Shown here in pieces: positions 1-42,800 of a stretch of 64,000 bases of DNA. A program made the position numbers and the translations under genes. Source of the stretch: Iphione sp. A-MEVVRFRX5. Taxonomy: Eukaryota. Within the stretch, counting starts at the first letter, position 1; each line of letters begins with the position of its first letter. A model generated the notes under the pieces. The model saw nothing but the letters and a program-made list of their open reading frames with translations. It did no database searches and had not been told where the DNA came from. The stretch covers positions 113,398,001-113,462,000 of the forward strand of contig OZ320313.1 of the NCBI GenBank assembly GCA_976226885.1. The letters are read 5' to 3'.

Positions 1-419
1 AGGTATTGAACATTGCAAATTGAGGTTTACCATTCATTGCGGATTTAATGGAAAATCATTGTCGCAGTCTGCTGGCCTGGCAGATCAATCGTCAGGCAGA
101 AATGTGTGCCTATCAGCTGGAGTCCCTCAGTCACTGTCACTTCCTCGGTGGCATCGATCCACGAAGGCCAAGGATGTAGTGGCAGAATGTGTTGAGTGTC
201 AGTCAACGGGGGATGCAGTGATCATGGTGGCTCAATAATCGAACCCCTGCTGGTGATGTTAAGGGCAGGCGGTAGCAGGTCATACTTAGGCGTCTTACTG
301 TTCGATAATCATCAGTCTCTGGACTGTAATTATTCTCATCGACCTTGAGCAGTCGCGTGGGCCTCACACGTCCAGGATGGCCATGTGATGATCACAAAGC
401 GCTTTATTCCCTCCCGCAG

Positions 420-483
420 CCGTGAACGGGTCAGGTACTATGGCAAGTGTACCACGAACTGAAGAGAAACGGCTTCCAGCACA
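420..483 (+). CDS. SORBS: SORBS candidate internal exon ([20 protein letters not shown])
   Basis: ctcccgcag acceptor and CA|gtaagt donor; phase 1 in, phase 2 out, which matches the exon at 4116. Confidence 0.6.
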
Positions 484-3400: not shown

Positions 3401-6400
3401 GACAACTTTGACCGCGAGAGTACCATGACGATGGAGCATATTCTGTGCGTAGATTTAAAGCTATTATGAAGTGGAGATAGCAGACATTGTGGGGCTGACT
3501 GGCTGCTGAGCGAGCAGATCGCCACGTACGTATAATTAGGTACAATGATAGGCCATAATAGATTAACTGAAGTCACCTTGGGGTTCGGGTGGCCCTCTGT
3601 AATTTAAATTGCTGGCCGTTTTCCATGAAGTTTGCCTGTTTATAAATGTTGATTGAACAAATGCTGAGTACATGTATTTGATAGGCCCAAGTTATATTTG
3701 TTTACCCTCGTGTCTATGTTACATGGATTCTCTCTCTCGGGAAAATCAGCTTTTAGGTTCGGGGTAATAATGTATACTGAGTAACCCTCGGTAACACCAC
3801 CCCTTAACAACTGCCAGTAGTCTTAAAAGTCGGTTTAACGTCCCAATGTTTTAGACTAGTACAATAGCTTTCAGGGATTAGATTTATAATATTAATTTGA
3901 TAATATATGCAGTACGTGCACATTGTGTATAGTATGGAGAATGTAATAGAATACCGTAGAGGGAGTTTTATGGCGTTTACGTACATACAGGCTGTCACTA
4001 TGTAATGACAGTGTGGACGGGCTTCTTCTGCGCGATGGTCTGTACCTTTGATCCTGTTGAAATTGTTGATGGAAGGATCCCTAAGTAATTGTTATTTTTC
4101 TCCTTTTTATTTTAGGTCATGGTCTCCTCCTCACGTGCGATATCGAAATGAAGTGTACAGGAACCAACCCAAGAGTATCGCCGATTACGAGCCGGGCCAT
4201 TCCTCCATAGCGCTACGGGAAAACAGAGTGGTAGGTTGACGGTTAGGACCATTTAAATAAAATAAAAGATAAAGATAACATATAAGTCGTAACTCTATGG
4301 TTAGTCACTCTAACGACGTATCTACTCTGTTTTGTTTAGAGTAAGTCGCTCTTACGCGTATTTTTGCCTCTTTGAGTTAAAATTACGTACTGCTCTTATT
4401 GTGTTGTTGTTGAACTTAACTTCTCTGACCGACTCAGTGCTTTGTGTGTCTCTCTGAGAGCGCCGCTCAGTCTCAGACAAATCTTTACTGTATGTGTTCA
4501 CCAATAATAATAATAATTAGGCTTCTCGTTATTAGAGAACCTTTAATTAATTCCCCCAATGGAATACATTACAATCTAATATGCCTCCGCTCTCTATTAA
4601 ACTAAAAAAAGCACATCCTGTTCTACCCAGTCACAAATAATTCCCATAAAATATGTATCAACAACTATAGCTTATTCAGATAACAACTATAGCATATTCA
4701 GATAAGTTAAGTCCTATACACATATCACGTAACTTCTAGGTAGGTCTTGACAGTCCCCCTACTACTTGATATTATAACGGTACGTTTAAGCCTGGGAAAG
4801 TTCACCTATTTGTAAAGTATCTTACCAATAGCATTCATTATGAGAATATATTATACACATTTCAGAGTGTCTTCCATTTGCGTAAAAAAGAGTTAACCGT
4901 AAGGAGCATGGTCTTATGAATGCCACTTTACCTTTTCGTCCATCCCAAGTAGTTTTTCGTTGTGAATTGCGTCTTTAAGCGTGTATCCATATCCACTACC
5001 CCTCCAGAACTATTTTTGAAACATGTACCTTACTTCAACTGCATGTTGGTTTCATGTGACAAAAAATATTAGTGTAGTAGTAATGTACATCGTTAGGGTC
5101 TGTTAGACGTGTATTGCGTGAATACAGTTACCTTTCGACCTTTCAAATGTATGTGAAGAACAAATTTCTATACGTTTGTACGGAATGTAAACCTGCATGT
5201 CCGTTGTCTCAGTGAAAGCATTTTCATTCAGTAGCATGTCGTGCATTTACTCTAATAATAGGATTGTAGCTGTGGCAGTGAAACGAATTTGAACATTATG
5301 TATATATTCTTGCACGGCATTTGAAATAATTTTCCTGAAGAATGCGTCCTCATCGTTAGTCTTAATTGGGGACATAGCTGAGGTATTTTCCAACCCAAAA
5401 TATCACCTTTTTTCTGTCATGAACACATGGAATGTAAACATCCAACCAGACGAATAAAATGGTCGCTATAGTAGATTTATAGGTGTGTGCCTTCTAGTTG
5501 GAAAGAATGCTTGGACTATTTTGATGCTGTACCTAGTAGTATCACTGAGGTCCTCGCTGTAATTGGCTGATCCTTTGTGCTCATCGATGACTTCTTATCA
5601 AATGTGCTCTTTGGTTCGGTGTGCACTGGTACCCCCAGTATGTAGATGCAGACAAGAGGGAACGAACCCCCAAGAGCCCCCGAACCCCCACCCGGAGCAC
5701 TCCGAAGAGCCCCCGGAGTGTAAGCCAGGTGAAATTGAAGGTGAACCACCTACCTTTAGCCCAGGACTAGCTTGTTGTGGTGTGTCGCGTGCTGTAAAGT
5801 CTGCACCCCTTACCGTCTGCACTAACAAGTTTGCCCTAACCCAGTGTTGTCCTTTTCGCGGGTAACCTGTACATAAAACTGTATGTAACATTCAATTGCA
5901 CTTGGGTACAGTTAAAGATGCAACTACATGGCCGTAAAGGAAAGCCGGTTCATTTATGTCGGAACTCGCCTTTTAAAAATCTGAATAAAGAAACCGCTAC
6001 CAAATATGGTTTTACCCATTTCGAGCAATTTGTTTTCAGCGGGGAATAGAAATCTTTGCTCAGCAAAATGAAATGGTTGATTTTGGAATCCAAACCTTAT
6101 CGCTGCTCTGTGCTTATACACTCTTCTCTCTTGGACTACTTGGCACCCCTTTTTCCACTACTTTTGTCTTTATATTGTAGTATTGTTTCCCTCTGCTTTT
6201 CTTGTAGACACAAGGTGTATCATACCTCAACCTCAGCCACTCAAAGGCTGCTTTCTAACCTGGCTTCATTCTTGTGCATTGTTCTGTTTGAGATGACGGC
6301 GCTCTAACATGCATCCCAGATGTTGCAGTCACTTCTTTTTGTCATATACTGTCGACCGTGTCTAGACCTATGGAACTAAGTAGCCATGTACATTTTTGAC

Positions 6401-12400: not shown

Positions 12401-15400
12401 ACTGGTCAGCTTCGTAAGATTTATTACAGACCACTGTTTGTTCCCTTTATTAATTTCCAATCTTGTTCTTGCCAACAATAGTATCCTGAAGGAACACCAG
12501 TCCGAGCCAGATATAAGGAAAACCAACCGGCCAGTGACTCCGGTCACTGAGGTTGAGGCGAAACAGGCATACAAGAAAATCCAGCAGGGTGGAGAAATTC
12601 CTATCTATGGTCTTCGGCTTCCCTATCCAGAGAAAAGAGGTAAGGTCACGGTTTGGCTCTTTCCATAATCATAGTGGAACTTCTCGCTGGTTTACGACCA
12701 CATCAAAAAGTACAAATCGAAAACTCTTCAGGTCAGCGGTTTTGGTACGCCAAGAATATTGCATGTTGGAGAAGTCTAAATTGTCATAGTTTTTTGAGTA
12801 GGCTTACTATTTAATCGCAAGCAGTTCGCACAGGGGTGTGGAAACAAAGCTTAAACTAGTGGAAACAAAAGACTTCAAACCAAATACATATTTATATATA
12901 TACATGTACTCATTACAAATGTGTTGGGTTGTCCAGAGCCAAAGGATGAGACTCCCTCGTACTTTCCTTCTCTCATATTTATGTTGTGTTTTCTTACCTG
13001 TGATACTGTCGTTTGAATTTACTTTCCTCATGGCTGATTTGGGCTGTGGTAATCTTTCATACCTCTGCCTCCTTGTCAGTGGTTGGTGTCGTGTAATTTA
13101 TTGTCTTATTCTTTGTCTTTATTAGTTCGTCATGGTAATTGTTAAACTGTTCATGTCCGTATTCACTTCCTATGAAATAAGTTACCAATTAGAAAACGAT
13201 CACTTTGTTAGCTACATATCACCTGCCTGTCACGAATCACACCAAAAGCTTTTTACTGCTTATGAAACAATCGTGCGTTATGCAAATCACAGGATCTACT
13301 CCTATCAGCACATCGCAGTCCGTTTGCGGAGCCTTCTGTCCCATTGGGTCTTGTTCCACTATATGCTTTGTGACTGGAATACGCACGACTAGCGGCAATA
13401 CAGGTAGACTCTAATAAACCAGAGGACGAAGCCCGGAATAAATTCATTCGCCTTGAGGTTTCCCAACACGATGCAAGACGCGCCAGATCGCCGCCGGAGG
13501 ACATGCATATACATGTATGTGTAGAACTTGGCATTCGGCTGAGTATCTGTTAGGACGCTATCTCAGTTGTTGCGAGATATTCCTGCTCAACCCGAACTGT
13601 AGTTTCTAGCCTAGTAGCTGCTGTCCATCTTGAAGTGATCACATTCCATTATGGCAGTTCAGCTTATAACATGGAGTTCACATCATTTGAAATCACTGGG
13701 TTTTCAACACCTAGTAGACTTTCTTTTGCGAATCACAGTGCAGTATTGGGCTGGCACCTTTTACATTTCCAGTAAACCAGTTTGTTTCCCCCTCATTCAC
13801 CTCACATAGGACACCTGAATTTACGGAGTTGGGTCCCACCTCCCACAACACCCCTCTTAACTGCTTTCAGTCCAGTCCACTCTGATCTCACTGTCACACT
13901 CAACTTTCAAATCCCGGCCGCTCTGTTATCAAACCAACACAAGCATACTTTGAAATGAAATAATTTTAACACTGAAAGGTTTTGAAGCATCATTTTTTTG
14001 CCACATAATGTCGTCAGGTATCTCAAAAGTATTTCATAAGCCATATTGCTTTAACAAAAGACGCTTTCCAGATTGACACCAGACAGTAACTTTCATTACT
14101 AATACTTTACTAATAACCTTTGTTGCAGCAAGTTGGCTTGAAGGGCAAGACCTAGCTGCCGGGTATCCCCATCAGGGTCTCTCTACCCTTTGTAAGAAAC
14201 AGGACACCTTGAAAAAGCATTTAATACATGGACAGTATCACCCTGTAAAAACTAATCATTTGATAGGAAAAGGAACTGCCCATTTAGATGTGGTGTGCAG
14301 TCAAATTCTCCACCCAGCAACACCCCCTTCCCTATCTGATAGTAAAAGGAAACCCACCCTCTCTACACGCACAGTTATCAATACTAGCAACCCAATCCCA
14401 TCCATCCAGTCACCTACCCTATTTACTGGCTTGGTAAAGGATTTGCAAAATTTAGCGTGCCTCCCAAACCACTGTCTGTGTTCGCGTCACCGTCAGAGGG
14501 CTCAAACTAAGTGTTTAAAAGTAGCTCAGAAACGTACCCATAAATTACAGTTACGGAGACTTAGTCCGTCCGTTTGCGGTAACAATGGATTAAGGGAACT
14601 TTTGCACCTGGAACAAGGCACAGAGACGGAGAGTATGGCGGTAAGAAAAGAAAGTTCCAGACCCTTTTCCTTTACCAGGGCACATCTGGGAGATTTTGCG
14701 TATGATGAAAGATTCCTGAGCAACGAGGCAGAGCTGATGGACAGCAGCAACGATAGCAGGTATTATATGACCTCTTTCTCTGACCAGGAGCGATCTGACC
14801 CCCAGAGGGAAGCATATCAAAATTTACACCAAGACATTTCAACACAAGAAGCTTTCACAGCAGGAGAAGAGTATCCCCAATATCAGTATGAGACAAGCCC
14901 GTCCGTAGATATCGGGCATCACTTCAATAGGAACGAATTCTGTAATCTACAACAGGGGAAGGGCTTGGAATATGAAATAAAGAGACCCGAGGTGCTAGAG
15001 CTTTTCAGGAAGTACTACGCCGAAGGCTCTAAAGTGGCTGAAGACATTCTGTCCAATGCCTCCTCAGAGAACTTTGCGGACGATGAAGATGAGCAAAGGA
15101 AGAGAGAAAACTATCGGCTGAAGGTGGAAAATCATTACCGACGTCTAATGGAGGAAGGAGTCATGTCCCCTGGGGCCGAGTACCTGTCTGATTCCTGGGG
15201 CTCGCAAGCTGAAAAGAGCCCATCCCCCTTAGACAACTCTAACTACCAGATCGGCATCACCCAGTCTGATTGGAAGGCCATTGACCACCACAGGACGCTG
15301 TCCCAGGAGAAGGTGGCCGTACCTGACGCAGCCGTCACAACTGCAAGGTTGCCTAGTGCACTGAAGCACTCGAGGGATCCAAGTCCCAAGGCACAGGATA

Positions 15401-18400
15401 AAGGCAAAAAGAAGGTGCGGGTTAGGAGACATGATTCCCTTATCAACCAAGATGCAGAGACTCAAAATCCAAAGCCGTGTGTCTGCCGGTCTCGCCTTTC
15501 ACAAGGAGAGCCGCTTTTTGAAGGCGAACCAGATCTTTTAGAGGAGACCAAAGGTAAAGTTCACACTACCGGCAGTTGCACGGTACCTTTCAGTCGATAC
15601 CGACCAGACAGTTCCCCTAGTTATTACGGCACCCGTCAGGACCGTTTATCCCTGGACAGAGACGACCGCGCTGACCCTGGCCTATCGCCGGGTGAGGAGG
15701 ATGGCTATATTCCAGGTGGATATGATCGCGACGGTTCGTTCTTGGATCTGCGACACGATGCTACTTACCGAATTACAGGACGCCCTCCATCATCGCCTAT
15801 GATCAGGGCGCGGTCGTCGGCAGGGTCGCAGCCGTCACCGCGACGCGTGTACGGCCACCACATCGCCTCCCCGGGTCGTTCAAGTCCCGTCTCTGAGGTG
15901 TCCACCGGCTCCTACCAGTCGTCACCGAAAGGATCGCCTCGGCGGCAAAAGCGGCCTGCCGTCGACGACTTTTACGTTCACTTCCGGCGGCGCTCGGAAC
16001 TATCGGAATGCAGCGATCGGTCTTCAAGATTAGACCCACAAACCTACCAGTCCTACGCAGCAGGCATACTGCACTCCTCACGCAAGTCGGAGCGCTTCCT
16101 TCGCTTGCAGAAGCACTACGCAACACTGGAGAGGATCACGGAGATTGAAGAGCGAACGCGGAGCAGCAATGAGCAGAGCGGACGGCGACGCTTCAACACG
16201 GTCAGCCTGAAGGCGCTCTCCAAGGCGCTCGGCCGACTTCCCTCTAGAGTACAGGATATTCTCCTCTCGAAATACAAGCTGGAAAGTCTAGAGGAGCTGC
16301 AAGAACTGTATGCCGAGTTGGAGGAAGCGCGAAAGCTCGAGGAGTTCTTCTTTGACACGGGGAATCTGGAGGATATCCAGTGGAACCCCTGGAAAGACCC
16401 AGGTCTAAAGACGAAAGGTATGACTATTCGTGACCTGTATGAGATATACGAAAAGGGACGAGGACCCATGAACACACGAGTGGTCAGGCGGGGAAAGAAA
16501 AAGGAGGAGGTCAAGAGAGAGATGTCCTTCAGAAAGCTTTGCGAAAAGTACTGTCACCTGGATGAGGTGTCGATGAGGGAGCGTGTGATGGAGGAGTGGT
16601 GGAGTCGCAGGTCACACTCCCGCAGGGGGTCGGACGCCTCGTCGGTCATGTCGTCAGCCAGCACCGTCGGCTCCTACCTCCACATCATGGAGCAGGCCTC
16701 CAAGAAGGCCAAGGAGCGGCCGCTCTATGGCTACCACATCGCCGAGCATCCCAACAAGTACGAGGTGCACGTCGAGAACGTACGGCGCCTCTCCAAGTCG
16801 TGCCCGGACGTGTCGGCCCCCTCTGCCCTGCACGTCCGCTCGGCCTCCCAGCCACAACCCAGCGGTCGGAGGAAGGATGGAAGGACCTTACCACCAAGAG
16901 CCTCGTCCTTTAAGAGATCCGGCTTTGGCGACGAACGGAATGCCGTGTACAGAGTACAGCTGCATGACAAGGGAGAGGCTTCTTTACAGGAGGACCATGC
17001 TAACTACGTCGAGCGAAGAGACGTAGATAGTCTCCGCATAGTCAGGCCACCCTCAGGTCGAAGCTCTGAGTCGGGTTACGATAGCATTGACGGAAGGACA
17101 ACTAAAGACTTGCGATTAAAGCCCTCTGGGTACAGCACGAAAGACGGGAAGCGTTATGTTGAAGAGCTCGTCTCTGATACTTCGAATATAGTCCCGGTGG
17201 CTGGGACGGAGGTGTTGGCTTACCCCGTACAGTGGGACGGTCGACCCTCCGGCGCGCGGCCCAGAGCGGCAGCAACCGCGCGCGGATGGCAGTCGGAGAT
17301 CAGGGGAGTCGTGGGTGGAGATGAGGAGCCAGGCCTCGGCCGCCATACCCATACACGAAACCAGGAGCCGGTCAGGAGGTACGGAGCCTCCACGGCAGAC
17401 GCCCTCTTCACCACCGACGATACACAGGAGAGAGCCAGGAGGATGAAGATTCGCGAGGAAAACTTTCGAGAGCGACAGCGCTGGCGCAAAGATTCTAAAC
17501 CCCATCCTGGCGCTGTGGCGTCTGCGTTGTCTATTTTCGAGCCGTCGAGTTACAGTGCCAAGGTGGTGCCTAACTGGAAGGTCCCCGCAAACAAAGTACA
17601 TCATCACAAGCAGCAAGGCCGACCCTCCCTTCAAGTGGATGTGTTGCGGGAGGAGGAGGTGGGCAGTGGTAGCCCGCCGAACTCTGGTTTGACAGCACGG
17701 GACGCTGCGGAAGGATCGTCCAACAATAGCCAAAGCTTATCTCCGGCGGCGCAAGCTCTATTCCCAGGAGAAGGGTACAGTCAACTGCCATACACTGACA
17801 TTGTCGGCGTGCCTCCAGAGCGTCCAGCGCCTCCCTCCGCGTCAGACCTCGCGCCCAGATACGTGCGGTCCTTATCGGCGGGGGCAGATGAGCAGCCCTA
17901 CTCTTCAGGATCGCACCGGGGCAGTGAAAGTGATTTTCAAAGCACGCGTCACTCCTTCGAGCGGCGGTCCTATCTGCTGGACGACAGTAGACCTGCACCA
18001 AGGACAGCGCTGACTCAGCGCTCCGTGAACACTCCACTAGGACGTTACGAAGCTAAGATTCGGAGCAAGAGCGCTGAGCCGCTGCCGCCGCCGCCGCCAC
18101 TACGGCCCAAGTCGGCCGTCGACCCTTCGCTTGCCAGCGTAGACAACTCCAGTCTGAGACGTAAAGACCTATCGAAGAGCACACCGTGCTTGAATGATTA
18201 CCGCCCAGCAGATGATGGACTCAGCGTAAAGAAAGCCTCAGGGACGACGAGCAGCTCACCGGAGGGGCGTGGAGCTAGTGCTGAGCCCATTTATGCGTCG
18301 GTTCCAGCTCGAGAGGATAGGCTCAAGGAGGCGGCGACACGACGGGTCGGGACGGACCGTCAGCGCCCGGGACTACAGCATTACGTTAACAAACGGCATA

Positions 18401-21400
18401 CCCAGAGTGCGGACCATTGGGCACCTCGGATAGAACGGAGGTGGGAAGTTGAAGGAGCAGCAGGAGATCAGGTAGAGAGTGCTGGTCCAGTGAGTCATGT
18501 GATCCACCGTCAGTTCACAGACGGCGACACAGGTGAGAATTTAATGGCGGGCAACGGTGCTGCTAGAGAAAAAGGAAGCCTGTCGAACGAGCGCACGCCT
18601 TTCAATCACGGGAACGACACGACCTTCTCCGCCCACGCGAAGCCCGTCCCTCTGGAAGGCCGTCCCTTTCTACTTGCAGGTACGCAGCAGTCATCGCCCT
18701 CTTCCCACTCACAGTCGCCCACCGTGTCCACTCTGGCGACGTCCCTCTCTTCCAGCCAGCCGTCAGATGATACCGCCACGCGAGGTCGCGGGAGAAACCT
18801 GTCCGCGTTCCGTCAAGAAATTGAGGACGAATATAGGAAGATTTACGACATGACCAAGAAGGCCGCCATGTATGATCACAGCGCAGATCCGGCAGGTTTC
18901 CCGGACGGACCTTTCAAAGACAGCAGTAGTAGCGACCGACAGCGGGCCATCTCTGCTCCCAGCCTGTCCTACAGGGCCAGCGTCGACTCCGCTCGTTTCG
19001 ACGGGTCGCACGGCCCTCGCGATACGGGGGACATGCTGTCTGGAAGCAACGACACGCTCATCATACGAGGGAGCGACCCCGACCTGCTGGCCGAGTCGGC
19101 TCCCAGGACATACAGTTCGGTGAGGCGCATGAAGAATCTTTTCGAAGAACAGAGGCTGGAGAAGTCCCAGTCGGAGCCCAATCTGGCCCAGGAGGTCGGT
19201 GAATATGACATGGGACCTTCTCGCAGTGCGCGCTCCGTCGAGAATGTTATCACTGGAGGGTCTGAGCTTTCTAGGAGTCCCAATTTCCAGGATTTGAGAG
19301 CAAAGTACGAGTCGGGGTACGTATCGGAAGCACACAGCCCGGTTAAAGAGGTGAGAACAAGTACCGGCGAACTTCACGGTCTACAGCCGTACACCTCAGC
19401 GAGTCCTCATCAGCACAGAGCGACCGTGGAAGGCAAACGCCCACCCGCCTATGGTCAGAGTCAGCCGAATGTGGGGACACCAAACCACAGTAGTTCCCCC
19501 CATATGCCTGTTGCCAAGTACGGACCTCAGAAGTCGGCCCAGCGCCCATGGGACGTCGTTAGAACTTACTCACCACCACCCAGCGAGGTTGAAAGGAACC
19601 TTAATGCTATTGAGGGCCTTGGGCAGGAATGGGAGCGCGACAAATACAAATTGTCCCAGCGGACAAAGTCCTCTCCGTATAAACAGCAGGACAGCGACAG
19701 CCCACAGGTTTGGCGAGAGTTCAAAGATCCGTCGCCGGTGGAACCGTCTCCCCCAATCACACCACTTAACCGTCCTCCCAATCCACCTCCGTATATTCCA
19801 CCCCCTGAGTTCAAAGCCAGCCAAAAGTCTAAAGGCAGCAGCCACGTACTACGCAACAGTACCCCAACACCAAGTAGGTTAGGACCCTCCCCAACCTCAC
19901 CTTATTACCTGGATCGGGAGACCGGTCAGAGTGAGCCTTCAAGTAGTATCAGTGACCGGCAGCAGGTGGCGCCCCCGAATGCCAGGACGCCCTCTGGCAG
20001 CTCAGCCCCACTTTCACCTTCAAGCACACAGGACGCAACTAGCCACTTCGAGCAGACAGGTGCCTTACTTTAGTACTAATCGTTGTGCAGTCAGTATGGT
20101 GGACAGAGCACATCTCCCTCTCCTTCACTGTTCTCCCACGGCTTCCCTGTGGCTTCAGTCGGTGTTTCTCCAGCATGCCTTTTAAAACAGTATTTTCTTT
20201 TCGATAGGGTTCTTAGCTCACCTCCTTCCCGTCAGTGTCTTGGTAATTGGAATCACTGTCACATCTCCAAGGGGTGTGTGACTTGGCTTTGTCACATGGG
20301 TGGCTTTGGACTCGGTTGCTTGATATTTATACACTGCACGCAGAAGGGCATACACAATTGCACCGAACACGCGATATATATTTTTTTGGTTTCTTCTTTT
20401 CGGTACTGAGCACTGTACACACGTGTTCCGACGGTGATGGTATTGCCTCCTTGCCACGAGACTTCTATGTTGGCTTGGTCTCGCAGGCTTGCTTCTCTTC
20501 ACTGGGGGCACTGCCCGTATCACCAGGAAATGTTTATTCTATGCTCCAGTTTTATATTGTTTTTTTTTTCTAAAATGGTGAATTTGCTTTCTTCTTACAG
20601 CTGGATTTTCCGCTCTTTATTCACTTCTGTATGGGGGTATGTTTTAAATATCCTTTGAATACTTCCTTGCATCTTGACATTGTTGTGATTAGTTTTCTTG
20701 AATGAATGAAGCCCTCTAAGGAGGCTGAGTATGGAGGCAGAACTCTTCCAAGGAGATACTTTTTATGTGATTGCCGTCAGTTCATCCAAGGCAATCTTTG
20801 CACGAACAAAATTCAGAGATCGCGTACACACTGTATTATTTAGATTGTATGTTCAGTTATGCAGTGATAGACTCTCCACTGCTGCATCCTTGTCCTGTAA
20901 TCCCCTAGCGGTTATCTCGCGAACCAGAAAACATTGTCGAGCATGCAGTGCTGCCCCCTGTCAGTCGTAGGTAGACTGTAAATACAATACCGCCCCAGTG
21001 TAGACAGGCAGTGGCAGTTTATGAACGCATGATAGGTAGCAAGGTTTTTCTTGACATATTGTAACGTGTTGATAAAAGTAGACTTTGTATTGTCATCTTG
21101 TTTAAAGGATTTGCACAATAGACTGTTAATATATTGGGCCTTTCGGTCCATTCAGGAGCATCTTGGCCGAAGGGCATATATGTGATGTTTGTTGAATTTC
21201 TGGTTTCTGTATCGCTATAATAGATGTTGTTTGTAAGTTGAATCTGCCTACGTACATCAGTCGGCTCTGTATCAATCTTCCAATTATACGTATAATTCTT
21301 TATTGTTGTATTCTCTTTTTTCAAAACTCATCCTTGTTCCTACCAACTTTTCTTTGCGTCCCCCAGAACCTGCCGAATCCAAACCAATCGGGCCCGACCC

Positions 21401-24400
21401 GAAGGCTCCCCCACCCCCAGCCAAGTCTACGGCAAGCATAAGTCTGCAGAACAAGTCAACGGCTAAACTCAATCTCAGCAAAGCGCGCTCTAAAAGCCTA
21501 TCTGGCATAGAGAACACGCCACCGCCGAGAAACACTATCCGTACGGCCAGCATCAAAGGTAGTCACCTGTGTGTCGCCGCCGCCGCCGCCGCCGCCGCCG
21601 TCGCCGCAGCTGCACTAGCCCCCCACCCCCTCCACATAAAAACTATACATTTGAATCCTAATCCTCGACCTATGATGGCCCGCCTTGCCCCCCCCCCCCC
21701 CCGTTAACATATTCCTCCGGAGATACGATGTACATCTTGTATTTTTTCAATTCCATTCGCTGCAAAACTGCTGTACCCCAAGCTTCATGCACATTGGCCG
21801 ACTGACAGTTATTAATTTCAGCTGATTATACATGTAGTTTGATACAAGTAACCCTCAATGTGGCCGCTTTTCAGGCCTGTCGTGGACGGTCTTAATGCTT
21901 GCATCTACCAACTATGCGCCCCGCTCGCAGTGTGCCCACCGCGTGTATAGATCGGCAGCTGCTCCGTGCCCTGTGTGTTGTCCCCATGCCTGCTTATCGA
22001 CTTCCAACTAATACAGGTGTTCATTTGTAGCCTGGACTAAAGGACAGGTGTTTGGTCGGCTTTTTTTAGCCATACTATAACCATACTGATACACTTACTG
22101 GCCATTGCCCTCAGCCCCTGAAGTTTACACTGAAAAGGTTCCTATGTAAGTAACGTTTAGATCGATAAATCTCAAGAAATAAAAAAAGGGAGAAACCACC
22201 ATAGAAGCATAGCACATCACATTTGCATAGCACATTTGTTGGGATCAGTGTCATTTGAAAGAAAAAGTGCCAGTGGCTGAGGAGTAAGCTGTAAGATATT
22301 CATGCTGAAATATTGACTTATTTCTTGCTTTGACATTGAATCGTGTGTATTTGGTCCGAGATACTCAGAATAATTCACTGTTCAGTTCGACACGTACCTG
22401 AAGTTCCTGCTAAAGATTCCTAGGAAATTCAAACACCTCTTATTCAATTTGTATTGATACGTGAAATTGTATATTCTGGAAAAAGACGTTTTTATCATTG
22501 CTCACCCTCCCCCCTTTGATGGGAAAATGTTGTCGTGTGAATCTCGGACCAGGTATGTGAATGCGAAACCCAGTTAATCCGTCCCTTTTTGTATAGACTG
22601 GACTAACACATGACTCATTTATTTCCACAAATCTTTGAAAATATGTTATTGAGTTGTTTGCATAGTGTTATGCTTTGTTCGTTAATACACTGATAAACGT
22701 TTCGTGCAAAACAAAATAATTAATTGCATGTAAAATGTAAAACACACCGGATAAAATATATTAAAGTGTGAAGAAGATAGAACACATAGATAATTCTTAG
22801 CCAGATGAGGTTAACTAGGCTTACCGAAAGCAATGCCATAGCAAGCATCCTGAACTAAAACTTTCTGTCCGTGAAAATAACTTCACCCATTTTTTTTAAA
22901 TTTGTTTTAAAATTAGTTTTATTCAGGTCATTTTAAGATATTCATTTATTCATCCCTTGCTCAGCTCAAGCAATCACAGGAGACAGGAGACGGGGATCGA
23001 CCACATATGCCGCAAGGCGTGGTGCGTTTTTTTTCCTGAAGTAAGCTTAGTTTAGTATGATGTGTGTTGGAGCCGAAAATCGACACGCGCTGCTATACGC
23101 ACGTTCATTGTGTCCATCCCACACAGAACGTCATGGAGCGTCATCTCCATCACCCGGCCGCCCCCACCACCACTCGGCGTCTGACATTACCGGATACGGA
23201 AGCAGCCCTACCGGGCCGCCGCCAGGGGCCGCCATGGGCACGCTGGACCGCAGGCGGCGCGACGAGGAGGCTGCTCGCAGGAAAGCACAGATGGTGAGTA
23301 GAGACGCCCTCTGGCGTTTTATTAACTGACAGCCTGTTTATTATAAAATGAGGTCAATATACAGGCTCCCTTCTTTTTTTGTGTGTGTTTTATCCAGTTG
23401 ATTAGAGGATTTCTTTTCTTTTTTCAAGTCCGTATATTTGTAAAATTTGATTATCCAATTACAGTCAGCTGTATTGACACAGTCAGTTAAGGCCGTAGAT
23501 ATCTGCAGGATTTCAGTATTGAGAACTGTCACCTGTGTGTGTGTTTGTGTTTTAGCGTGCGTGTGTTTTAGCGTGCGTGTCTGTGTTATAAGGGGCCCTG
23601 GTATGCGTATTTCCGTTAAGCTGAAAACTCACAACAATCTCGAGCCCGTCCGGATTGCTGGTAAATACATGTAGTTTACATGCAACTGTTTATGTGGTCC
23701 TGCCTTTTATAGTAATAGTCCTCCGTCCAGAGCCCCCTTTTAAGCCGTCATGTCTACTTTTATTTCACTCCATCTCCTTTAAAGCATCCGTTTGGTCCGG
23801 CGGGGTCTGTCCTCTTGATGTTGGCCGGCGGGTTACGACCGCCTGGTGGCCTATCTGCAATGAACAGTTTCCGCGCTCTATCCATCACCATCGGCTCACT
23901 TGCCAGCTACCCTGACACTGCTGTGCCACTCTAGACACTGGTCGCACCAGTAACTGCTAACCCCCAACCCTGATGGTCTCAAAGATTGATTGTATTTCTA
24001 AAATGAAAGAATATTCGTTTTGTTCATCGAAATGTATTTAATGTAATTCAAAATTTTCTTTAACCGTTATATATTGCCTTAGCATATATAGACGTGGTCG
24101 ATATCGTTCCAACATTGAAGGCAGACCTAGTAGGCGGTAACGAATTACCAAGCAGTCACATTTGCGTACAAATGTTGTGGTTTGACCCAGATCAAGTCAT
24201 AAAACAGTATTTGAAGGAAACAAAACTTGGCTTTGGCCATGGTAATGATTTACAGCGACGTTAGATTGGCTGGTGGCTACTGCAGGCCTTCAGAGGGTGC
24301 GTGATCGACATGCGGACACGAGCAGCTCACGGCGGGGGGCGACGAGCAGAAAAATAAACCCGCTCTATAACAACGCCCATACCAACCCCACCTCACAACC

Positions 24401-36400: not shown

Positions 36401-39400
36401 GTACAGTAAGCACCGCATACTAATGCTGATGTGTATTGTCCCTACCCACAGACCCCAGCAGAAGTCGCCTATCCCGCCAGCTGCTGACAGGTTCGAGGAG
36501 GTGGACTCCATGTCGCTGCAGCGCCCCAAGAAGAAGGCCGGGTACACGCCGAAAGGCAAGGCCCAGGCTCTGTACAGCTTCACAGCCCAGAACCCCAAGT
36601 AAGTAGATTGACCGGCGTCAGCCTGACCTGGTCTTACCCAAATAGGCATGTGATAATTCTGCGCATTTATGGGGGCCCATGTATGTACTCCATTTTCATG
36701 ATTGTCCCCGCTGGTGTCAGAGCGAGCCGCAGGTCACAAATGGCTGGTGAGACCGTATTGGAAATAGCAAACCATTCTGCTGTCCCCTTCCTGCTACCAT
36801 TTATGTATGCACTGGCATATCATGCAAAGTATTAAGGAAGCTTGCAGGGAGAGTAGAAAGCCGTAAAGAGTTTTTTCATATTCATTAGATATCGTTTTGT
36901 CGACGGGAGGATCCTATAGAATGGGTGAATTGCCAGCTTGATTCTTGAAATTATTCTTTACATTTCCAATTGTTCCGGTTTCATTGTGATGAATACCAAG
37001 GTGTTGCCCAGTGAGGCTAATGGATCCGCTCTTTCTCATATACCTGTACCTTGTTTTGATAAATGTTTGGGGATACAGAAAAACAAGTCAGTACAGTATA
37101 ACTACCAGCTGTGCTTATTGGGAGATCTTAAGTGATGGTATAAACCTGCCCTAGAAAGGAGTGTAATGAAACGTGAATTGTTACATACGCAGCCAAAAGA
37201 ATATCGATTCAGAAAAGTCCGAATATTCAAATAGTCGTTCGTATCAGCACCTCACCGACTCGAAACTTGTATAAGACGCAGGTAATGAAGAACCATGATT
37301 GAAAAATACACTCGTTAGCATGTATCACTTCGAAATGACTTTACTCTAATAGAACCTTCGCAATTTTTCAGCCACAGTCAGCCCCGCCCAATTGGAACAT
37401 ACTCCCTGGTTATTCATGCATTTTTTCCTGCCACAAATATTGATTTTCCACGTATCTCATGCTTGCTTAACCGAACTCCCCTGTCAACTGGACGATTTTA
37501 GGTGAAATAGAGTATGTCCGCTTAATTGGGGTTGACTGTAGTACATATACGTGGACAGAATTAAATCTTGTTGTGAGTATTACTGTATTCAGAAAGCATA
37601 CTTACTCCAGATAGCAGTCTTTCTCCGCAAGTGATGGTCTTTTAAAGATTACTTTTTTTTGTACAAATTGCTTTCACAGGGAGTTGTCCTTCAAAAAGGG
37701 AGATATCTTGTACTTGCTGAGGAAAATCGACAACAACTGGTACGAAGGTGAACACCACGGGCGGATGGGCATCTTCCCTGCGAATTACATCAAGGTAGGA
37801 CCTAGTGCCAGTTCTAGTGTAGAGCACTTTCCATCTCTAATAGGAAACACGGCAGTGTATTTGCGTAATTACTTCACAGGAGACAGGCGGTAGAGAGTTC
37901 AAGATGATGTTAAGGACACAGTAGTGCGTTTTCGTCACAACTAATATCGGATCAATTTGGAGACTTTCACTTTCAGCTTGCGGAACACGATTTCCTTGAA
38001 ATTATTTTGTTAATCAGGAGGTGCCTGCAAAATCTTTAAATACCATTTTTCTGCAGAAAAGACATTAAACAAGGCCTGTCCCGACATGACTTGTACTGAC
38101 CCATGTACCCAAATGTACATACTAGTCACGTTTTCCTACAGTACATAGCTTGATTCATGAATGTTGTAAGGGATTGGTGTAAAAGATTTGACACCTAAAT
38201 CTCAGATGGTCAGATTGCAGTATAAAATTTATGTGATATAATTAAATTAACCCTTGTGAAAGCAAATGCATGTAGTGTGTAGTTTTCGCTGAGGTGTTTT
38301 TTAATAAGCGTTGTGAACGGTAAATAGTCAGAATGGGTGAGAGCGTGCTTTCCTATGAAACTCCCATTATAAAAGGTTTGTTAACACAAAAATATCCATA
38401 CCTTTTGAAGCAACGGTTCAGTTTGTGTCACTTGAAAAGTAAATTGCGTTTTTGACAGTTACTTTAAGGCACGAACTGATACGGTTCGTATGTGTTATTC
38501 TTAAAGAAAGCGTTTTTAGAGGGCTTTACCCTAGGCACACAGTGTCATGTATGGGATGCTTGTAAATGCAGTGGCCGATGGTCTACCAGCTTTCTTGGGT
38601 GCGTATATGTAGATACATGTATACATGTGCATATGTAAGCATGAAAGAACGTACTGCCTGGTCAGGATATGGTTAGCATTGATTTTCATGTTGACCTTTG
38701 ATCTCTTCCTGTGAAATCATTGTGATTCCAAAGGGAATTTAGCTATATGAGGAGCAGTTCAGGGTAGGCAGTTTAATTGATAAATAATCCTAGGCCCAAT
38801 GCTTATGTTTCTGTATTATATATATGTACATTGATGCATACATCAATTTATCACTCTACGTAGCCAAGGATTAGTAAACTTCTTCCTTATGCAGGCCGAC
38901 CATTTGAAATTGGTTCATGGGTATTAAGTTTTTTTCTCTCAAGAATCTAGGGTAATTTTGCAAGAGTTGACGGTGAGGTATGAAGTTGGAGCTGGTGGGA
39001 AGGTGGACTGGACCAGTCTAGAGAGGGGTGGTTTTCTCTGTTAATAATGACTGAGAGAAGGGGGTTCGGTGCGGACCCCCGCTTGGTCAGGAGGGGGGTG
39101 CATCTTAGAATTCCCAAGTCATGCCAAATTGGCTCATATCATGAAAATGATGAAAAATTAATTCGCATACTCTACCAACCGGATACTGAATATGGGAGGT
39201 CTAGACCCTAGATTGTAGAGAATTTGCGTATATACATGACTTAATAGCCTCCTGGGATGGGTCTTTCAGTGCAGGTGGCGTTATCATGTCTGGTAAGGAA
39301 ATTGGGGGGGGGGACGTGTAAATTTGTGTAAACATGTGTACAGGTGTATGGCAGTGCACATATAAGCAGACAGGTATACATTCACCATCTGCTATATTTT

Positions 39401-39822: not shown

Positions 39823-42800
39823 TCGCGCGCACGGTGCACGGATTAGTGGATATACCCACAAATTCAGTGTCTGTTTTTCCACGGAAATACATGCACATTC
39901 AGATATGTCTACGCTCCAATTAACGTTAGCCGCAAATATGACCTGTCATTAAACATTTTTTGCGACGCGCAGAATCAGGATGAGGAGAGCACCATTTCTC
40001 ATACCTACAATATGCACAAATACATTTTTAAACCCTTCGCTGAGACGATCCCTACGAACGCATCTCCTTTGCTTGAGTGAATATATTGTTTTGTGAGGCG
40101 CGTCCTGTAAAGCGGCTGACCACTTGTGTAACATCTGCCCTTCTACAGGTGACCACCACTTTGGAGACGGCTCATGCGGCCGCCTTCAGTCGGGAAGGGA
40201 CGGCCACGGCCAAGTACAACTTCACCGCCCAGACCACGGTAGAATTACCGCTCCGCAAGGTGAGAATCGCCTTTCTGATCAGCTCTTCTTCAGGGGTTCT
40301 CAACCCTTCGGTTGCTACCTAAGCTTCGGTCACCGTGCCATTTTGAGTTGGTCCCCATAGGCTCTGTGGGTGACTTTTTAGATTTTGTTTTATATGCTAA
40401 ATGTACAACATTTTACAAAAATTCACAACTGTACTTCAGTCAGCAAGTCATCGTTTTTACGAAAATTGTCTTCAGTGGCTGATACTGTTGTATGGAGGCA
40501 AAAGTTTGGATCGCTAACAAAAAGGTTAGGAACCCCTGCTCTGGTTAGACTTAAGAGCTGCAAGTGTCCGAAAGAATCCATATTTACACATTCATGTGTA
40601 TTTAGTAGAAACCTGCAGAGGTAAATTAGCTAGAGACCGGCCAATTGTGGTCTTCAAAGGAGTTACCTACATGTATTTATTCCTCGCTTCTGAGGTACAC
40701 CTGCAACTGTATCATTCCCAAACCAGGGCGAATTTCCAAATGTACACTGCATGATCATGTGATGCAGGGTACAAGCTCATTTGATAATCGAGAAGTCACA
40801 TGACTTTCATTTTTTTTAGGAAAAGGGGCATATAAGTCGATTTGATTTTTCTTTTTACAGAGAAATTTAATAATTTACGATTAAACTAGTAACAGGATAG
40901 AATCAATTAGGCATTTAATCATTTCAAGCACATAGTGGAGTCATATTAATTCATACTTACCTTTGAACAAAAGTGTCTTTTTGAAAAAGGTTAAACACTC
41001 AGAAATCAGAAGTAAACAACATCTGTCTACTTCATGCCCGTGCAAATTTCGAGTTTCATATGTACTCTTTGATGAAGTTAAAAACAGGTTGCCAGGAAAC
41101 CAGAAGTTGTGAAGCATAATGGCAGATGGCATGTTTACAAAATTCATCAGTACGAAACCATCAAAAAGGTATTATTAAATAAAACTGTTAACAAATATGT
41201 AGGGAATGAATACTCAACTGTTAGAGTATTTGGGACCTGGGACTTTTGGTCTCTTTTCAAGATTGGTTTCCCCTGTGATGTGAAGAAATCTGAAGAAAAC
41301 ACACGCTACAGTCAAGACTCGATATCCAAATGCTCTCTTTCACATAATTTTGTGTGGATACTGAATGATTTCGGATATCGAATACAGATCTTATAGTAAA
41401 AAGGCTTTTGTTTCACAGTAATTTCGTACCTAGATTGAAGAGGGACGTTTTATTGAATGAGTCAGAACGTTCCTCTCATTTTATACATGTGAGTAATGTA
41501 GTTCCGTTAGAAGTGGTCATCTCCATATGAGTGCTTACCTGCGGCTGCCACACCATTTTGCACACTTGCCAAGAGAATAAAATATCGGTCAACTTTGAAT
41601 TACGCATCGTGTTGCCTTTGTCCGTAGGGCGAGCTCGTGCACCTGATTAGACGGGTCGACGACAACTGGTTCGAGGGCAGAGCGGGCGGCCGACAGGGCA
41701 TCTTCCCAGTCGCCTATGTCGATTTGATCAAGGAGCCCGACACGCCGTTCGGCACGCCCATGTCGTCCGTGGCGCACACCCCAATGACGGGTAGGTGGCT
41801 CCGCCTAGCGGATACTGTTTGAACTAAACTACGCTCCCGCCGTCTAAAAAGCCGTGTATTCAAGAGTGTTCTCCGCCGCCTCCCCGCCTTACTTTATATA
41901 CGACAGTGGGTCGTCGTCTTATGTTTATCCAGAAAGAAAGTCTCTCTTGAAATTCAACTTTGTCTTGTATTTGGCCATCTGTTATTATTAGGTGCGAGAA
42001 AATACTGGTAGTCGAGACTCATGCTATCATTTTAGGGTTCAGCAATTTATACACCAAACACACCAGTTAAAGATAAACATTAAGATGAATGGCCCACTGA
42101 TACATGTATATTAAGTAGGTGTTTTTCTTAACATGTGCAAATTATTTTCACTTATTCAGATATCCGCCAATGGAATTTGCAGTTATTTTTCCTGCACAAA
42201 CACAATAGGAAGTACATGTATCCTGTTGTGTATCTGGGTCCATTGGTGTTCTTCTGATAGAATTAATATCAATTTGTACTTAAGTTAACCTCATTTTACC
42301 TACAGAACGACCCCTGGAACCTGCCTCCTTTTGGAGCTTCCACAATGAGAGTTCTTGCATGCACATTATACAGTCTTTTGCACCATTTTATATACATATG
42401 TGTACATGTAACTGACGGGGACCAAAATCCACTTCTCCTGTTGCCCACCCATGTTGGTATTTGGTGATCATGCGAGGAGCCGTACTGTTTTGATATTGCG
42501 TATGTAAGCATTTTAAGAGATATCTCACGTCAGTTGATGCGCAAGAAATAAGGCTTATTTTTCGTCCAAGTAAAATGATGACATAGGCCTTTTTTGCGAA
42601 GGTAGTGAAAACCGCTCCTTCAGGCTGCAATCTTCCTGTTTACTTCAGTGTGGTGAGTTTTATTTTTTTGCACTCGGAGCGGTCAGAGGCCATTTGGACA
42701 GGATGTTACCAGGCCTTCGGTCCCTGTTTCTAATTCGCGCAAGCCAGATTATCCATCATTGCTTGCATGGCCCTCGTTACAGCTGCTACTCTGCCCTCCT

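What the first reader, a model, noticed from the sequence alone, without database searches (positions are those of the whole stretch)
14129..20059. 5.9-kb frame-preserving giant exon in a SORBS/CAP gene
Seen: an uninterrupted 1977-codon frame between a phase-1 acceptor and a phase-1 donor, so it can be skipped cleanly (12639 to 21367). It encodes more residues than all the other exons combined. Known: giant alternative exons define neuronal giant ankyrins, and vertebrate SORBS2 has a much smaller neuron-specific insert (nArgBP2). Inference: a giant SORBS isoform with about 2000 mostly disordered residues acts as a spacer or scaffold. The donor is weak and an in-frame TAG lies 12 nt beyond it, so the exon may also serve as a terminal exon giving an SH3-less protein.
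Basis: partly seen in the sequence, partly recalled or inferred. Interest (0 to 1): 0.75.

Follow-up and report, generated by a model that had tools for sequence, protein, structure and literature searches.

The report
Giant conserved exon in SORBS/CAP gene
The 5.9-kb open frame is a real, strongly conserved giant coding exon in the middle of a worm's SORBS/CAP cytoskeletal-adaptor gene; similar giant forms are already in automated gene annotations of snails, ribbon worms and insects but have not been studied, and no RNA data could be obtained to show when the exon is used.

Summary
Window 14129-20059 (+) is an uninterrupted 5,931-nt (1,977-codon) frame between an AG acceptor and a weak GT donor, both phase 1, with TAG 12 nt beyond. 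Chance is about 1e-34.

The gene is a true SORBS/CAP orthologue. A SoHo half-domain lies 8.5 kb upstream of the window, and three SORBS-type SH3 domains lie at 36-46 kb.

The exon sits in the same intron, as a phase 1-1 exon of 5.7-8.0 kb, in at least three other spiralian genomes. In the nearest relative dN/dS is 0.11, and 0 in a ~275-residue helical core.

That core (window 15991-16818) has no Pfam family. [quoted passage not shown] These come from gastropods, a bivalve, nemerteans, an annelid and insects; 21 also carry the three SH3 domains.

So the giant isoform is real and ancient in protostomes, and already present in automated annotation. It is a new member of a known kind.

Not shown: alternative skipping, tissue specificity and use as a terminal exon, because no RNA run was listed.

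The parts
4117..4221 (+). Upstream conserved SORBS/CAP coding exon fragment (boundaries approximate)
   Evidence: 60% identity to Lineus longissimus SORBS-like isoform X8 residues 1211-1245. It is also conserved in insect CAP proteins, in the same order along the protein.
12482..12639 (+). Exon immediately upstream of the giant exon, with a phase-1 donor GAG|GTAAGG (5' boundary inferred)
   Evidence: Sequence. It is 79% identical to the exon upstream of the giant ORF in L001 and L002, and 57% in L003. It is homologous to residues 13-55 of the Nucella protein and to insect CAP.
14097..14128 (+). 3' splice site: two TACTAAT branch-point boxes (14097-14103, 14108-14114), a pyrimidine tract and TTGCAG
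   Evidence: The same tandem TACTAAT...TACTAAT...TTGCAG arrangement is seen in L001, L002, L003, L010 and L011.
14129..20059 (+). Giant coding exon, 5,931 nt, 1,977 codons, phase 1-1
   Evidence: Orthologous uninterrupted exons at the same position: L001 5,706 nt and L003 7,950 nt, both phase 1-1; L011 is also phase 1-1 by reading its acceptor and donor against the open frame (length not computed). dN/dS is 0.106 between two copies in the nearest relative.
14129..14640 (+). Weakly constrained N-terminal ~170 codons of the exon; only the first motif, WLEG.DLAA, is conserved
   Evidence: Identity across 19 homologues is 3-11%. pN/pS is 0.47 here against 0-0.18 elsewhere. In L002 this part is split off by a short intron.
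15409..15447 (+). Conserved basic motif [12 protein letters not shown]
   Evidence: 78% mean identity across 19 homologues.
15991..16818 (+). Conserved ~275-residue helical core module (exon residues 621-896), with no Pfam family
   Evidence: Alignment A1 has 25 invariant columns. AlphaFold2 predicts it all-helical at mean pLDDT 61. A profile search finds 185 proteins at E<=1e-3 and 64 at E<=1e-30. It is single copy in this genome. There were 0 nonsynonymous against 20 synonymous differences in the nearest relative.
17473..17529 (+). Conserved motif [18 protein letters not shown]
   Evidence: 66% mean identity.
19045..19080 (+). Conserved motif [12 protein letters not shown]
   Evidence: 76% mean identity. 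It is also recognisable in the Nucella protein.
20060..20086 (+). Weak donor GTGCCT followed by a conserved CTTT..TACTAAT box; in-frame stops at 20071-20073 and 20077-20079
   Evidence: 24 of 27 nt are identical to L001 although the proteins are only 46% identical. The CTTT-NN-TACTAAY box is also present after the donor in L010 and L011, always with TAA in frame.
20601..20636 (+).
   Evidence: The flanks are cag| and |gtatgt. The peptide is identical, with only synonymous changes, in L001, L010 and L011, and similar in L002. It is absent from every annotated protein fetched.
21367..21558 (+). Next coding exon, phase 1-1
   Evidence: Sequence. It is 72-79% identical to the exon downstream of the giant ORF in L001 and L002.
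36456..37797 (+). Two exons encoding SH3 domain 1 (36456-36599 and 37678-37797)
   Evidence: Pfam SH3 E 1e-11 on the second exon. Collinear with mollusc, nemertean and annelid proteins.
40143..41792 (+). Two exons encoding SH3 domain 2 (40143-40280 and 41628-41792)
   Evidence: Pfam SH3 E 2e-5. 62-71% identical to annotated SORBS proteins.
45937..46104 (+). Last coding exon, SH3 domain 3
   Evidence: Best solved-structure matches are the human SORBS1 third SH3 (2lj0, 2lj1, E 1e-26) and vinexin (2ct3). The next family is 13 orders of magnitude weaker. Pfam E 3e-14.

Best explanation
Window 14129-20059 is one genuine, giant internal coding exon of the single SORBS/CAP (sorbin-homology adaptor) gene of this spiralian genome, probably an annelid. 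It lies between the SoHo-side exons and the exons for the three C-terminal SH3 domains. It is orthologous to the central region of the 2,000-4,800-residue CAP/SORBS isoforms annotated in molluscs, nemerteans, annelids and arthropods, so it dates back at least to the protostome ancestor.

Shown: the exon encodes a Ser/Arg/Pro-rich chain low in hydrophobic residues. It contains a ~275-residue conserved helical module and about ten short conserved motifs. All of it except the first ~170 codons is under strong purifying selection in the nearest relative.

Inferred: the long isoform is an extended scaffold. It places extra docking and phosphorylation sites, such as RRHDS, RRGSD and RKDSKP, and the helical module between the SoHo end and the SH3 end of an adhesion and cytoskeleton adaptor.

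Inferred: inclusion is regulated. The exon has a very strong 3' splice site with tandem TACTAAT boxes, and a conserved weak donor followed by a conserved intronic box. It is flanked by short introns (1.5 kb and 0.54 kb), and its phase 1-1 symmetry is kept in every relative examined.
For: Open frame, splice sites and phases. Chance excluded.

Gene identity. SH3-3 best matches human SORBS1 and vinexin. SH3 Pfam hits fall on three exon groups. A SoHo half-domain sits on the same strand 8.5 kb upstream of the window (L004:1509-1598, Pfam Sorb E 2e-4). It is collinear with the Sorb domain of the Lineus protein, which scores 32.1 bits, above the cut-off.

Conserved position. The same upstream and downstream exons flank the giant ORF in L001, L002 and L003. 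The exon is 5,706 nt in L001 and 7,950 nt in L003, both phase 1-1, and L011 is phase 1-1 by reading its splice sites against the frame. Conservation starts exactly at the acceptor (WLEG.DLAA), and there is no ATG before codon ~170.

One polypeptide. The Nucella, Biomphalaria, Lineus, Paralvinella and Potamilus models are collinear with the window, from the upstream exon through the core to the SH3 exons. 21 representative proteins have both the core and three SORBS-type SH3 domains. Insect CAP proteins show the same order of ex4117, upstream exon, core and SH3.

Selection. dN/dS is 0.106 overall, 0 in the core and 0.124 outside it. Windows after codon 190 give 0-0.18.

Vertical inheritance. 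The core tree recovers arthropods, molluscs, nemerteans and a clade joining the window with the annelid Paralvinella.
Against: There is no RNA evidence for this species, because no run was listed. Inclusion, skipping, tissue specificity and possible internal splice sites are therefore all untested. The annotated models in other phyla are automated predictions. The Paralvinella annotation actually splits the locus into two gene models around the giant exon, and one arthropod-like model ends at the giant ORF without SH3 domains. The structure prediction of the core has low confidence (pLDDT 61, pTM 0.38). The scaffold function is inference from composition and from what is known of the family.
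Confidence: 0.85

Rival explanations
1. The exon is, in some or all transcripts, a terminal exon. The weak donor is not used, translation runs 4 codons into the intron (…QTGALL stop), and an SH3-less SoHo-plus-giant-region protein is made. This could coexist with the main explanation.
For: The donor GTGCCT is weak and conserved. An in-frame stop follows within 4-7 codons in WIN, L001, L010 and L011, and the TAA of the TACTAAY box is always in frame. 24 of 27 nt after the donor are conserved against L001. Drosophila CAP has an annotated isoform, CAP-PP, that lacks the common SH3 exons (PMC7259718). Vertebrate sorbin lacks all SH3 domains (PMC5706990). One annotated relative ends at the giant ORF.
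Against: No AATAAA or ATTAAA was found between 20060 and 21366. The first stop is not conserved between the two close copies, which read GAFL-stop and GAFLYY-stop. L002 and L003 read on for 16-19 unrelated codons, so there is no conserved C-terminal peptide. Many annotated relatives join the region to the SH3 exons. The conserved box is equally explained as an intronic splicing element.
Confidence: 0.2
2. The exon is constitutive in all long transcripts, not a skippable cassette. Short isoforms arise only from internal promoters, as for Drosophila CAP-PE/N.
For: Every long annotated isoform fetched contains the core. Strong purifying selection and a very strong acceptor argue for frequent inclusion. 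Drosophila has short SH3-only isoforms.
Against: Phase 1-1 symmetry is kept in three relatives despite length changes from 5.7 to 8.0 kb. The weak donor and the adjacent intronic block are conserved, which is a hallmark of regulated exons (own knowledge). RefSeq lists 45 or more isoforms for the Biomphalaria gene.
Confidence: 0.35
3. The open frame is a separate gene nested in a SORBS intron, or a relic of a mobile element, and is not part of the SORBS protein.
For: Prokaryote-style gene callers list it as a stand-alone ORF with no Pfam domain. The Babylonia RefSeq model P0041 has the core but no SH3 domain.
Against: There is no start codon for the first ~170 codons, yet conservation begins at the acceptor. 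It is single copy. It sits at a conserved position between the same exons, with conserved phases. 21 annotated proteins join it to SORBS SH3 domains. It has no transposon domains.
Confidence: 0.03

Closest known systems
Automatically annotated giant CAP/SORBS isoforms of protostomes. [quoted passage not shown]
   Same: The same gene family, the same order of conserved exons, and the same ~275-residue core module (E 1e-6 to 1e-64 against the profile). The three SORBS-type SH3 domains are at the C-terminus.
   Different: These are predictions without published characterisation. Outside the core, similarity to the window is limited to short motifs. Region length varies several-fold. The window's own species has no such annotation available to me.
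nArgBP2, the neuron-specific long isoform of vertebrate SORBS2 (1,196 aa)
   Same: It is a SoHo...3xSH3 adaptor lengthened by an alternatively included middle exon, detected only in neurons (PMC5938024).
   Different: The vertebrate insert is far smaller and carries a zinc-finger motif. No zinc finger or any Pfam domain is found in the window's exon. Sequence homology between the two inserts was not tested here.
Giant ankyrins (480-kDa ankyrin-G, 440-kDa ankyrin-B); own knowledge
   Same: A single multi-kilobase, frame-preserving exon inserts a long, mostly extended segment between folded domains of a membrane-cytoskeleton adaptor.
   Different: Unrelated sequence and gene family. Neuron-specific inclusion and function are experimentally established for the ankyrins. 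The ankyrin exons are vertebrate innovations, whereas this one is old in protostomes.
Drosophila CAP (CG18408)
   Same: It is the single protostome SORBS orthologue, with 23 transcripts and 20 polypeptides, including an SH3-less isoform, CAP-PP (PMC7259718).
   Different: Whether the fly's long isoforms contain the core module was not checked here. The published work used C-terminal antisera and short isoforms.

Membership tests
SORBS/CAP (sorbin-homology adaptor) family | [quoted passage not shown] | tested here: met
   The domain is not in the window. On the same strand 8.5 kb upstream, L004:1509-1598 (…WYKQMYKTLH…) matches Pfam Sorb positions 22-39 of 42 at E 2e-4 and 21.3 bits. That is below the 27-bit cut-off because the domain is split by an intron. 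The preceding exon, L005:7329-7535, is 51% identical to the stretch that runs into the Sorb domain of the Lineus protein, which scores 32.1 bits. The exon-wise genome scan with the family alone found nothing.
SORBS/CAP (sorbin-homology adaptor) family | Three C-terminal SH3 domains of SORBS type | tested here: met
   Pfam SH3 hits fall on 37678-37797, 41628-41792 and 45937-46104. SH3-3 is closest to human SORBS1 and vinexin, E 1e-26, with the next family at 2e-13.
SORBS/CAP (sorbin-homology adaptor) family | All parts belong to one transcript or polypeptide | tested here: inconclusive
   The window is collinear with single annotated proteins of Lineus, Nucella, Biomphalaria and Potamilus. There is no RNA for this species.
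Giant alternatively spliced exon (giant-ankyrin or nArgBP2 type) | Single uninterrupted, frame-preserving exon of several kilobases | tested here: met
   5,931 nt, phase 1-1. 5,706 nt in L001 and 7,950 nt in L003, both phase 1-1.
Giant alternatively spliced exon (giant-ankyrin or nArgBP2 type) | Inclusion is alternative and tissue-specific | not testable with these tools
   The look-up of sequencing runs listed no RNA run, so read laying could not be used.
nArgBP2-specific insert of vertebrate SORBS2 | [quoted passage not shown] | tested here: not met
   No Pfam family at E<=1 on the whole exon. Cysteine makes up 0.8% of residues.
Protostome CAP/SORBS giant-region core module (unnamed; alignment A1) | Match to the 280-position profile, including the invariant [15 protein letters not shown] motif | tested here: met
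   The window scores 421-427 bits over profile positions 2-279, but it is one of the 23 sequences the profile was built from. The independent evidence is that the motif is invariant in the other 22 sequences and that the profile finds 185 proteins.

The most novel reading that the evidence does not exclude
The ~275-residue helical module and its satellite motifs may form an undescribed, ancient domain of CAP/SORBS giant isoforms. It would be shared by annelids, molluscs, nemerteans and arthropods, and possibly all bilaterians, and would have its own binding partner. In addition, the conserved weak donor plus the CTTT..TACTAAY box may be a splice switch. That switch would choose between a giant SH3-bearing scaffold, a form with the 12-residue hydrophobic microexon, and an SH3-less truncated protein.
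Probability: 0.3. Interest if true: 0.6.

Novelty: new member of a known kind. Interest (0 to 1): 0.4.

Why it matters
SORBS/CAP adaptors have been studied almost entirely as proteins of about 1,300 residues or fewer. This locus and its relatives show that protostome CAP genes carry a selected 5-8 kb single exon, so the gene's main coding mass is a region nobody has characterised. That region includes a conserved helical module without a Pfam family.

The finding also shows how gene callers mishandle the locus, giving stand-alone ORFs or split models. It supplies precise, testable splice elements: tandem branch points, a conserved weak donor box and a 36-nt microexon. These can be used to study how very large exons are recognised.

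Tried and rejected
RNA evidence: the look-up of sequencing runs with the whole exon listed no RNA run. The cap is one search, so read laying was never used.

Domain and fold searches that gave nothing:
- Pfam on the exon.
- Two ESM Atlas searches, which returned only weak disordered look-alikes scoring 0.82 or less.
- A PDB profile search.
- AlphaFold2 of the core gave only a low-confidence all-helical model, so no fold search was run.

A genome-wide exon-wise scan with Pfam Sorb found nothing. The SoHo exons were found only by tblastn with the Lineus protein on fetched upstream DNA. My first SoHo regular expression was too narrow.

A paper search for the assembly and run accessions of the relatives found nothing, so the closest relatives remain unnamed.

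Rejected readings:
- Tandem-repeat protein.
- Transposon or multicopy element.
- Independent nested gene (see the rival explanations).

Left out: I did not build, translate or search any joined, spliced protein model. Exons were searched one by one by reference. The N runs at 29006-29143 and 30423-30605 were left as they are.


Full report
**Observation**

The + strand is open from 14077 to a TAG at 20071-20073. The acceptor reads TTGTTGCAG|C, so the exon starts at 14129. The donor reads ACAG|GTGCCT, so the exon ends at 20059. That gives 5,931 nt, or 1,977 codons, in phase 1 at both ends.

The upstream exon ends at 12639 (GAG|GTAAGG, phase 1). The exon at 21367 begins in phase 1.

The other five frames carry 57-105 stops. 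Shuffles never gave more than 245 open codons. The chance of such a frame at this composition is about 1e-34. The stretch is GC-rich and A-over-T skewed compared with its flanks. It has no tandem repeats and is single copy in the 1.18-Gb genome.

**Which gene**

Three SH3 domains are encoded downstream on the same strand, at 36.5/37.7 kb, 40.1/41.6 kb and 45.9 kb. Pfam confirms them exon by exon. The last one is closest to the third SH3 of human SORBS1 and vinexin (E 1e-26), with the next family 13 orders of magnitude weaker.

The SoHo domain is not in the window. An exon-wise family scan of the genome missed it. I used the Lineus longissimus protein P0229, which carries PDZ, Sorb and three SH3 domains, as a probe on 40 kb fetched upstream. 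This found collinear exons, including L004:1509-1598 (…WYKQMYKTLH…). That exon matches the C-terminal half of Pfam Sorb at E 2e-4. The gene is therefore a bona fide SORBS/CAP orthologue that starts at least 20 kb before the window.

**The exon is conserved as an exon**

A word-based protein search found ORF calls of 1,600-2,650 residues on unnamed contigs, 34-50% identical over up to 92% of the query. These are prokaryote-style ORF calls on animal DNA, which explains why they have no Pfam domains.

In three fetched loci the same upstream exon (57-79% identity) and downstream exons flank the ORF. Between the conserved acceptor and donor, the exon is 5,706 nt in L001 and 7,950 nt in L003, both multiples of three in phase 1-1. 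L011 is also phase 1-1 by reading its acceptor and donor against the open frame, though I did not compute its length. In L002 the first ~130 codons are split off by a short intron.

Conservation begins exactly at the acceptor (WLEG.DLAA). The window has no ATG for the first ~170 codons. This argues against a separate gene.

**Selection**

The nearest relative's assembly holds two copies, on contigs L001 and L010, which are either haplotypes or very recent duplicates. Between them dS is 0.128, dN is 0.0136 and dN/dS is 0.106. The core shows 0 nonsynonymous against 20 synonymous changes. Outside the core the ratio is 0.124.

In windows of 190 codons, only the first window is relaxed (0.47). All the others lie between 0 and 0.18. 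The low-complexity parts are therefore constrained too.

**What it encodes**

The composition is 12.8% Ser, 9.3% Arg and 8.1% Pro, with 74% disorder-promoting residues.

Conservation across 19 homologues is concentrated in residues 601-900, at 50-56% identity. There are also short islands: [48 protein letters not shown] and [12 protein letters not shown].

The core (window 15991-16818; alignment A1) has 25 invariant columns, including [15 protein letters not shown]. AlphaFold2 predicts only helices, at low confidence. Pfam, PDB and the ESM Atlas give nothing.

**How far it reaches**

A profile search of 1.84 billion representative proteins found 185 proteins at E<=1e-3 and 64 at E<=1e-30. The named ones are:

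- A bivalve: Potamilus.
- Nemerteans: Lineus and Tubulanus.
- An annelid: Paralvinella.
- Arthropods: Choristoneura 'cbl-associated protein' isoforms of up to 3,647 residues, Apis dorsata, Cephus (about 4,600), Phymastichus (4,825), a Timema 'SoHo domain-containing protein', Darwinula and Strigamia.

Twenty-one representatives carry both the core and the three SORBS-type SH3 domains.

The Nucella, Biomphalaria, Lineus, Paralvinella and Potamilus proteins are collinear with the window. In insects the order of exon 4117, upstream exon, core and SH3 is the same.

A maximum-likelihood tree of the core recovers arthropods, molluscs and nemerteans as separate groups. It also recovers a well-supported clade that joins the window with Paralvinella. 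This fits vertical inheritance and other agents' unchecked note that the genome is an annelid's.

The giant region is therefore ancestral to protostomes and is already present in automated annotation. I found no paper that describes it. Published fly work uses short isoforms and C-terminal antisera.

**Splicing signals**

The acceptor is preceded by two perfect TACTAAT boxes and a pyrimidine tract in the window, L001, L002, L003, L010 and L011.

The donor is weak: GTGCCT in the window, L001 and L010, GTGCAA in L002 and GTTACA in L011.

In the window and L001, 24 of the 27 nt after the donor are identical, although the proteins are only 46% identical. A CTTT-NN-TACTAAY box follows the donor in the window, L001, L010 and L011, always with its TAA in frame. 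This fits a regulated donor. It also leaves open read-through to a short C-terminus.

Against a terminal-exon role: no AATAAA or ATTAAA lies in the 1.3-kb intron. The first stop is lost in L010. L002 and L003 read on into unrelated codons.

The flanking introns are short, at 1.5 kb and 0.54 kb. From my own knowledge of large-exon splicing, that is what intron-defined recognition of a very large exon needs.

**A missed microexon**

A comparison of the downstream introns found a 48-nt block. It resolves into a 36-nt exon at 20601-20636, flanked by cag| and |gtatgt, in phase 1-1. It encodes [12 protein letters not shown].

L001, L010 and L011 encode the identical peptide with only synonymous differences. 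L002 encodes AGFNELYKLLYG. None of the annotated proteins I fetched contains it, so it is probably alternative.

**What could not be done**

No RNA run was listed for the exon. Expression, skipping, tissue specificity and terminal-exon use therefore remain untested. Homology to the vertebrate nArgBP2 insert was not tested. That protein is described as 1,196 residues with a zinc-finger motif and a neuron-only exon (PMC5938024), and no such motif is present here. The N runs in the window were left untouched.

**Verdict**

The exon is an orthologue of an old, annotated but unstudied giant region of protostome CAP/SORBS. It is a new member of a known kind, of moderate interest. The useful additions are the conserved helical module, the selection data, the splice elements and the microexon.

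Noticed in passing
window 20601-20636: A conserved 36-nt phase 1-1 microexon encodes the hydrophobic peptide [12 protein letters not shown]. The peptide is identical, with only synonymous changes, in three other loci, and it is absent from all annotated relatives fetched.
   Followed up: partly
window 20067-20080 (also L001, L010, L011 just after their donors): A CTTT-NN-TACTAAY box, which looks like a branch-point consensus, lies 8-21 nt downstream of the weak donor and is conserved across species. Its TAA is always in frame. Its function is unexplained: it could be an intronic splicing element or a stop for a read-through form.
   Followed up: partly
window 14097-14114: Two perfect TACTAAT boxes 4-5 nt apart sit ahead of the giant exon's acceptor. 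They are conserved in all five related loci examined.
   Followed up: partly
L004:1509-1598, L005:7329-7535, L006:9384-9575 (G000:C1:113368001-113398000): The SORBS gene continues at least 20 kb upstream of the window, including its SoHo exons. The Lineus orthologue's isoform X8 starts with a PDZ domain, and weak collinear matches reach -20.6 kb. The upstream 'synaptopodin/myozenin-motif' gene noted by another reader at -23.6 kb might therefore belong to the same transcription unit.
   Followed up: partly
L009 (Paralvinella palmiformis, GCA_025642065.1) 1-18726: The GenBank annotation splits the orthologous locus into a SoHo-bearing model and an SH3-bearing model, with the break in the giant-exon region. 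This is an example of gene callers mishandling this exon.
   Followed up: no
L002 about 2640-3110: In one relative the first ~130 codons of the giant exon are separated from the rest by a short intron. This is the same segment that is weakly constrained elsewhere.
   Followed up: partly
L001 and L010 (same assembly, ERZ25767047): Two copies of the whole locus lie on different contigs, 97% identical in protein and 94% in introns. They are haplotypes or a very recent duplication. Synonymous divergence in the exon (0.128) exceeds intron divergence (about 0.06).
   Followed up: no
window 54036-55469 and 57486-58511, minus strand: Two long open frames (478 and 342 codons) belong to a convergent neighbouring gene, the synaptopodin/myozenin-like gene of other notes.
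   Followed up: no
window 29006-29143 and 30423-30605: Two runs of N lie inside the long SORBS intron between the 23-kb and 36-kb exons. They were left as they are.
   Followed up: no
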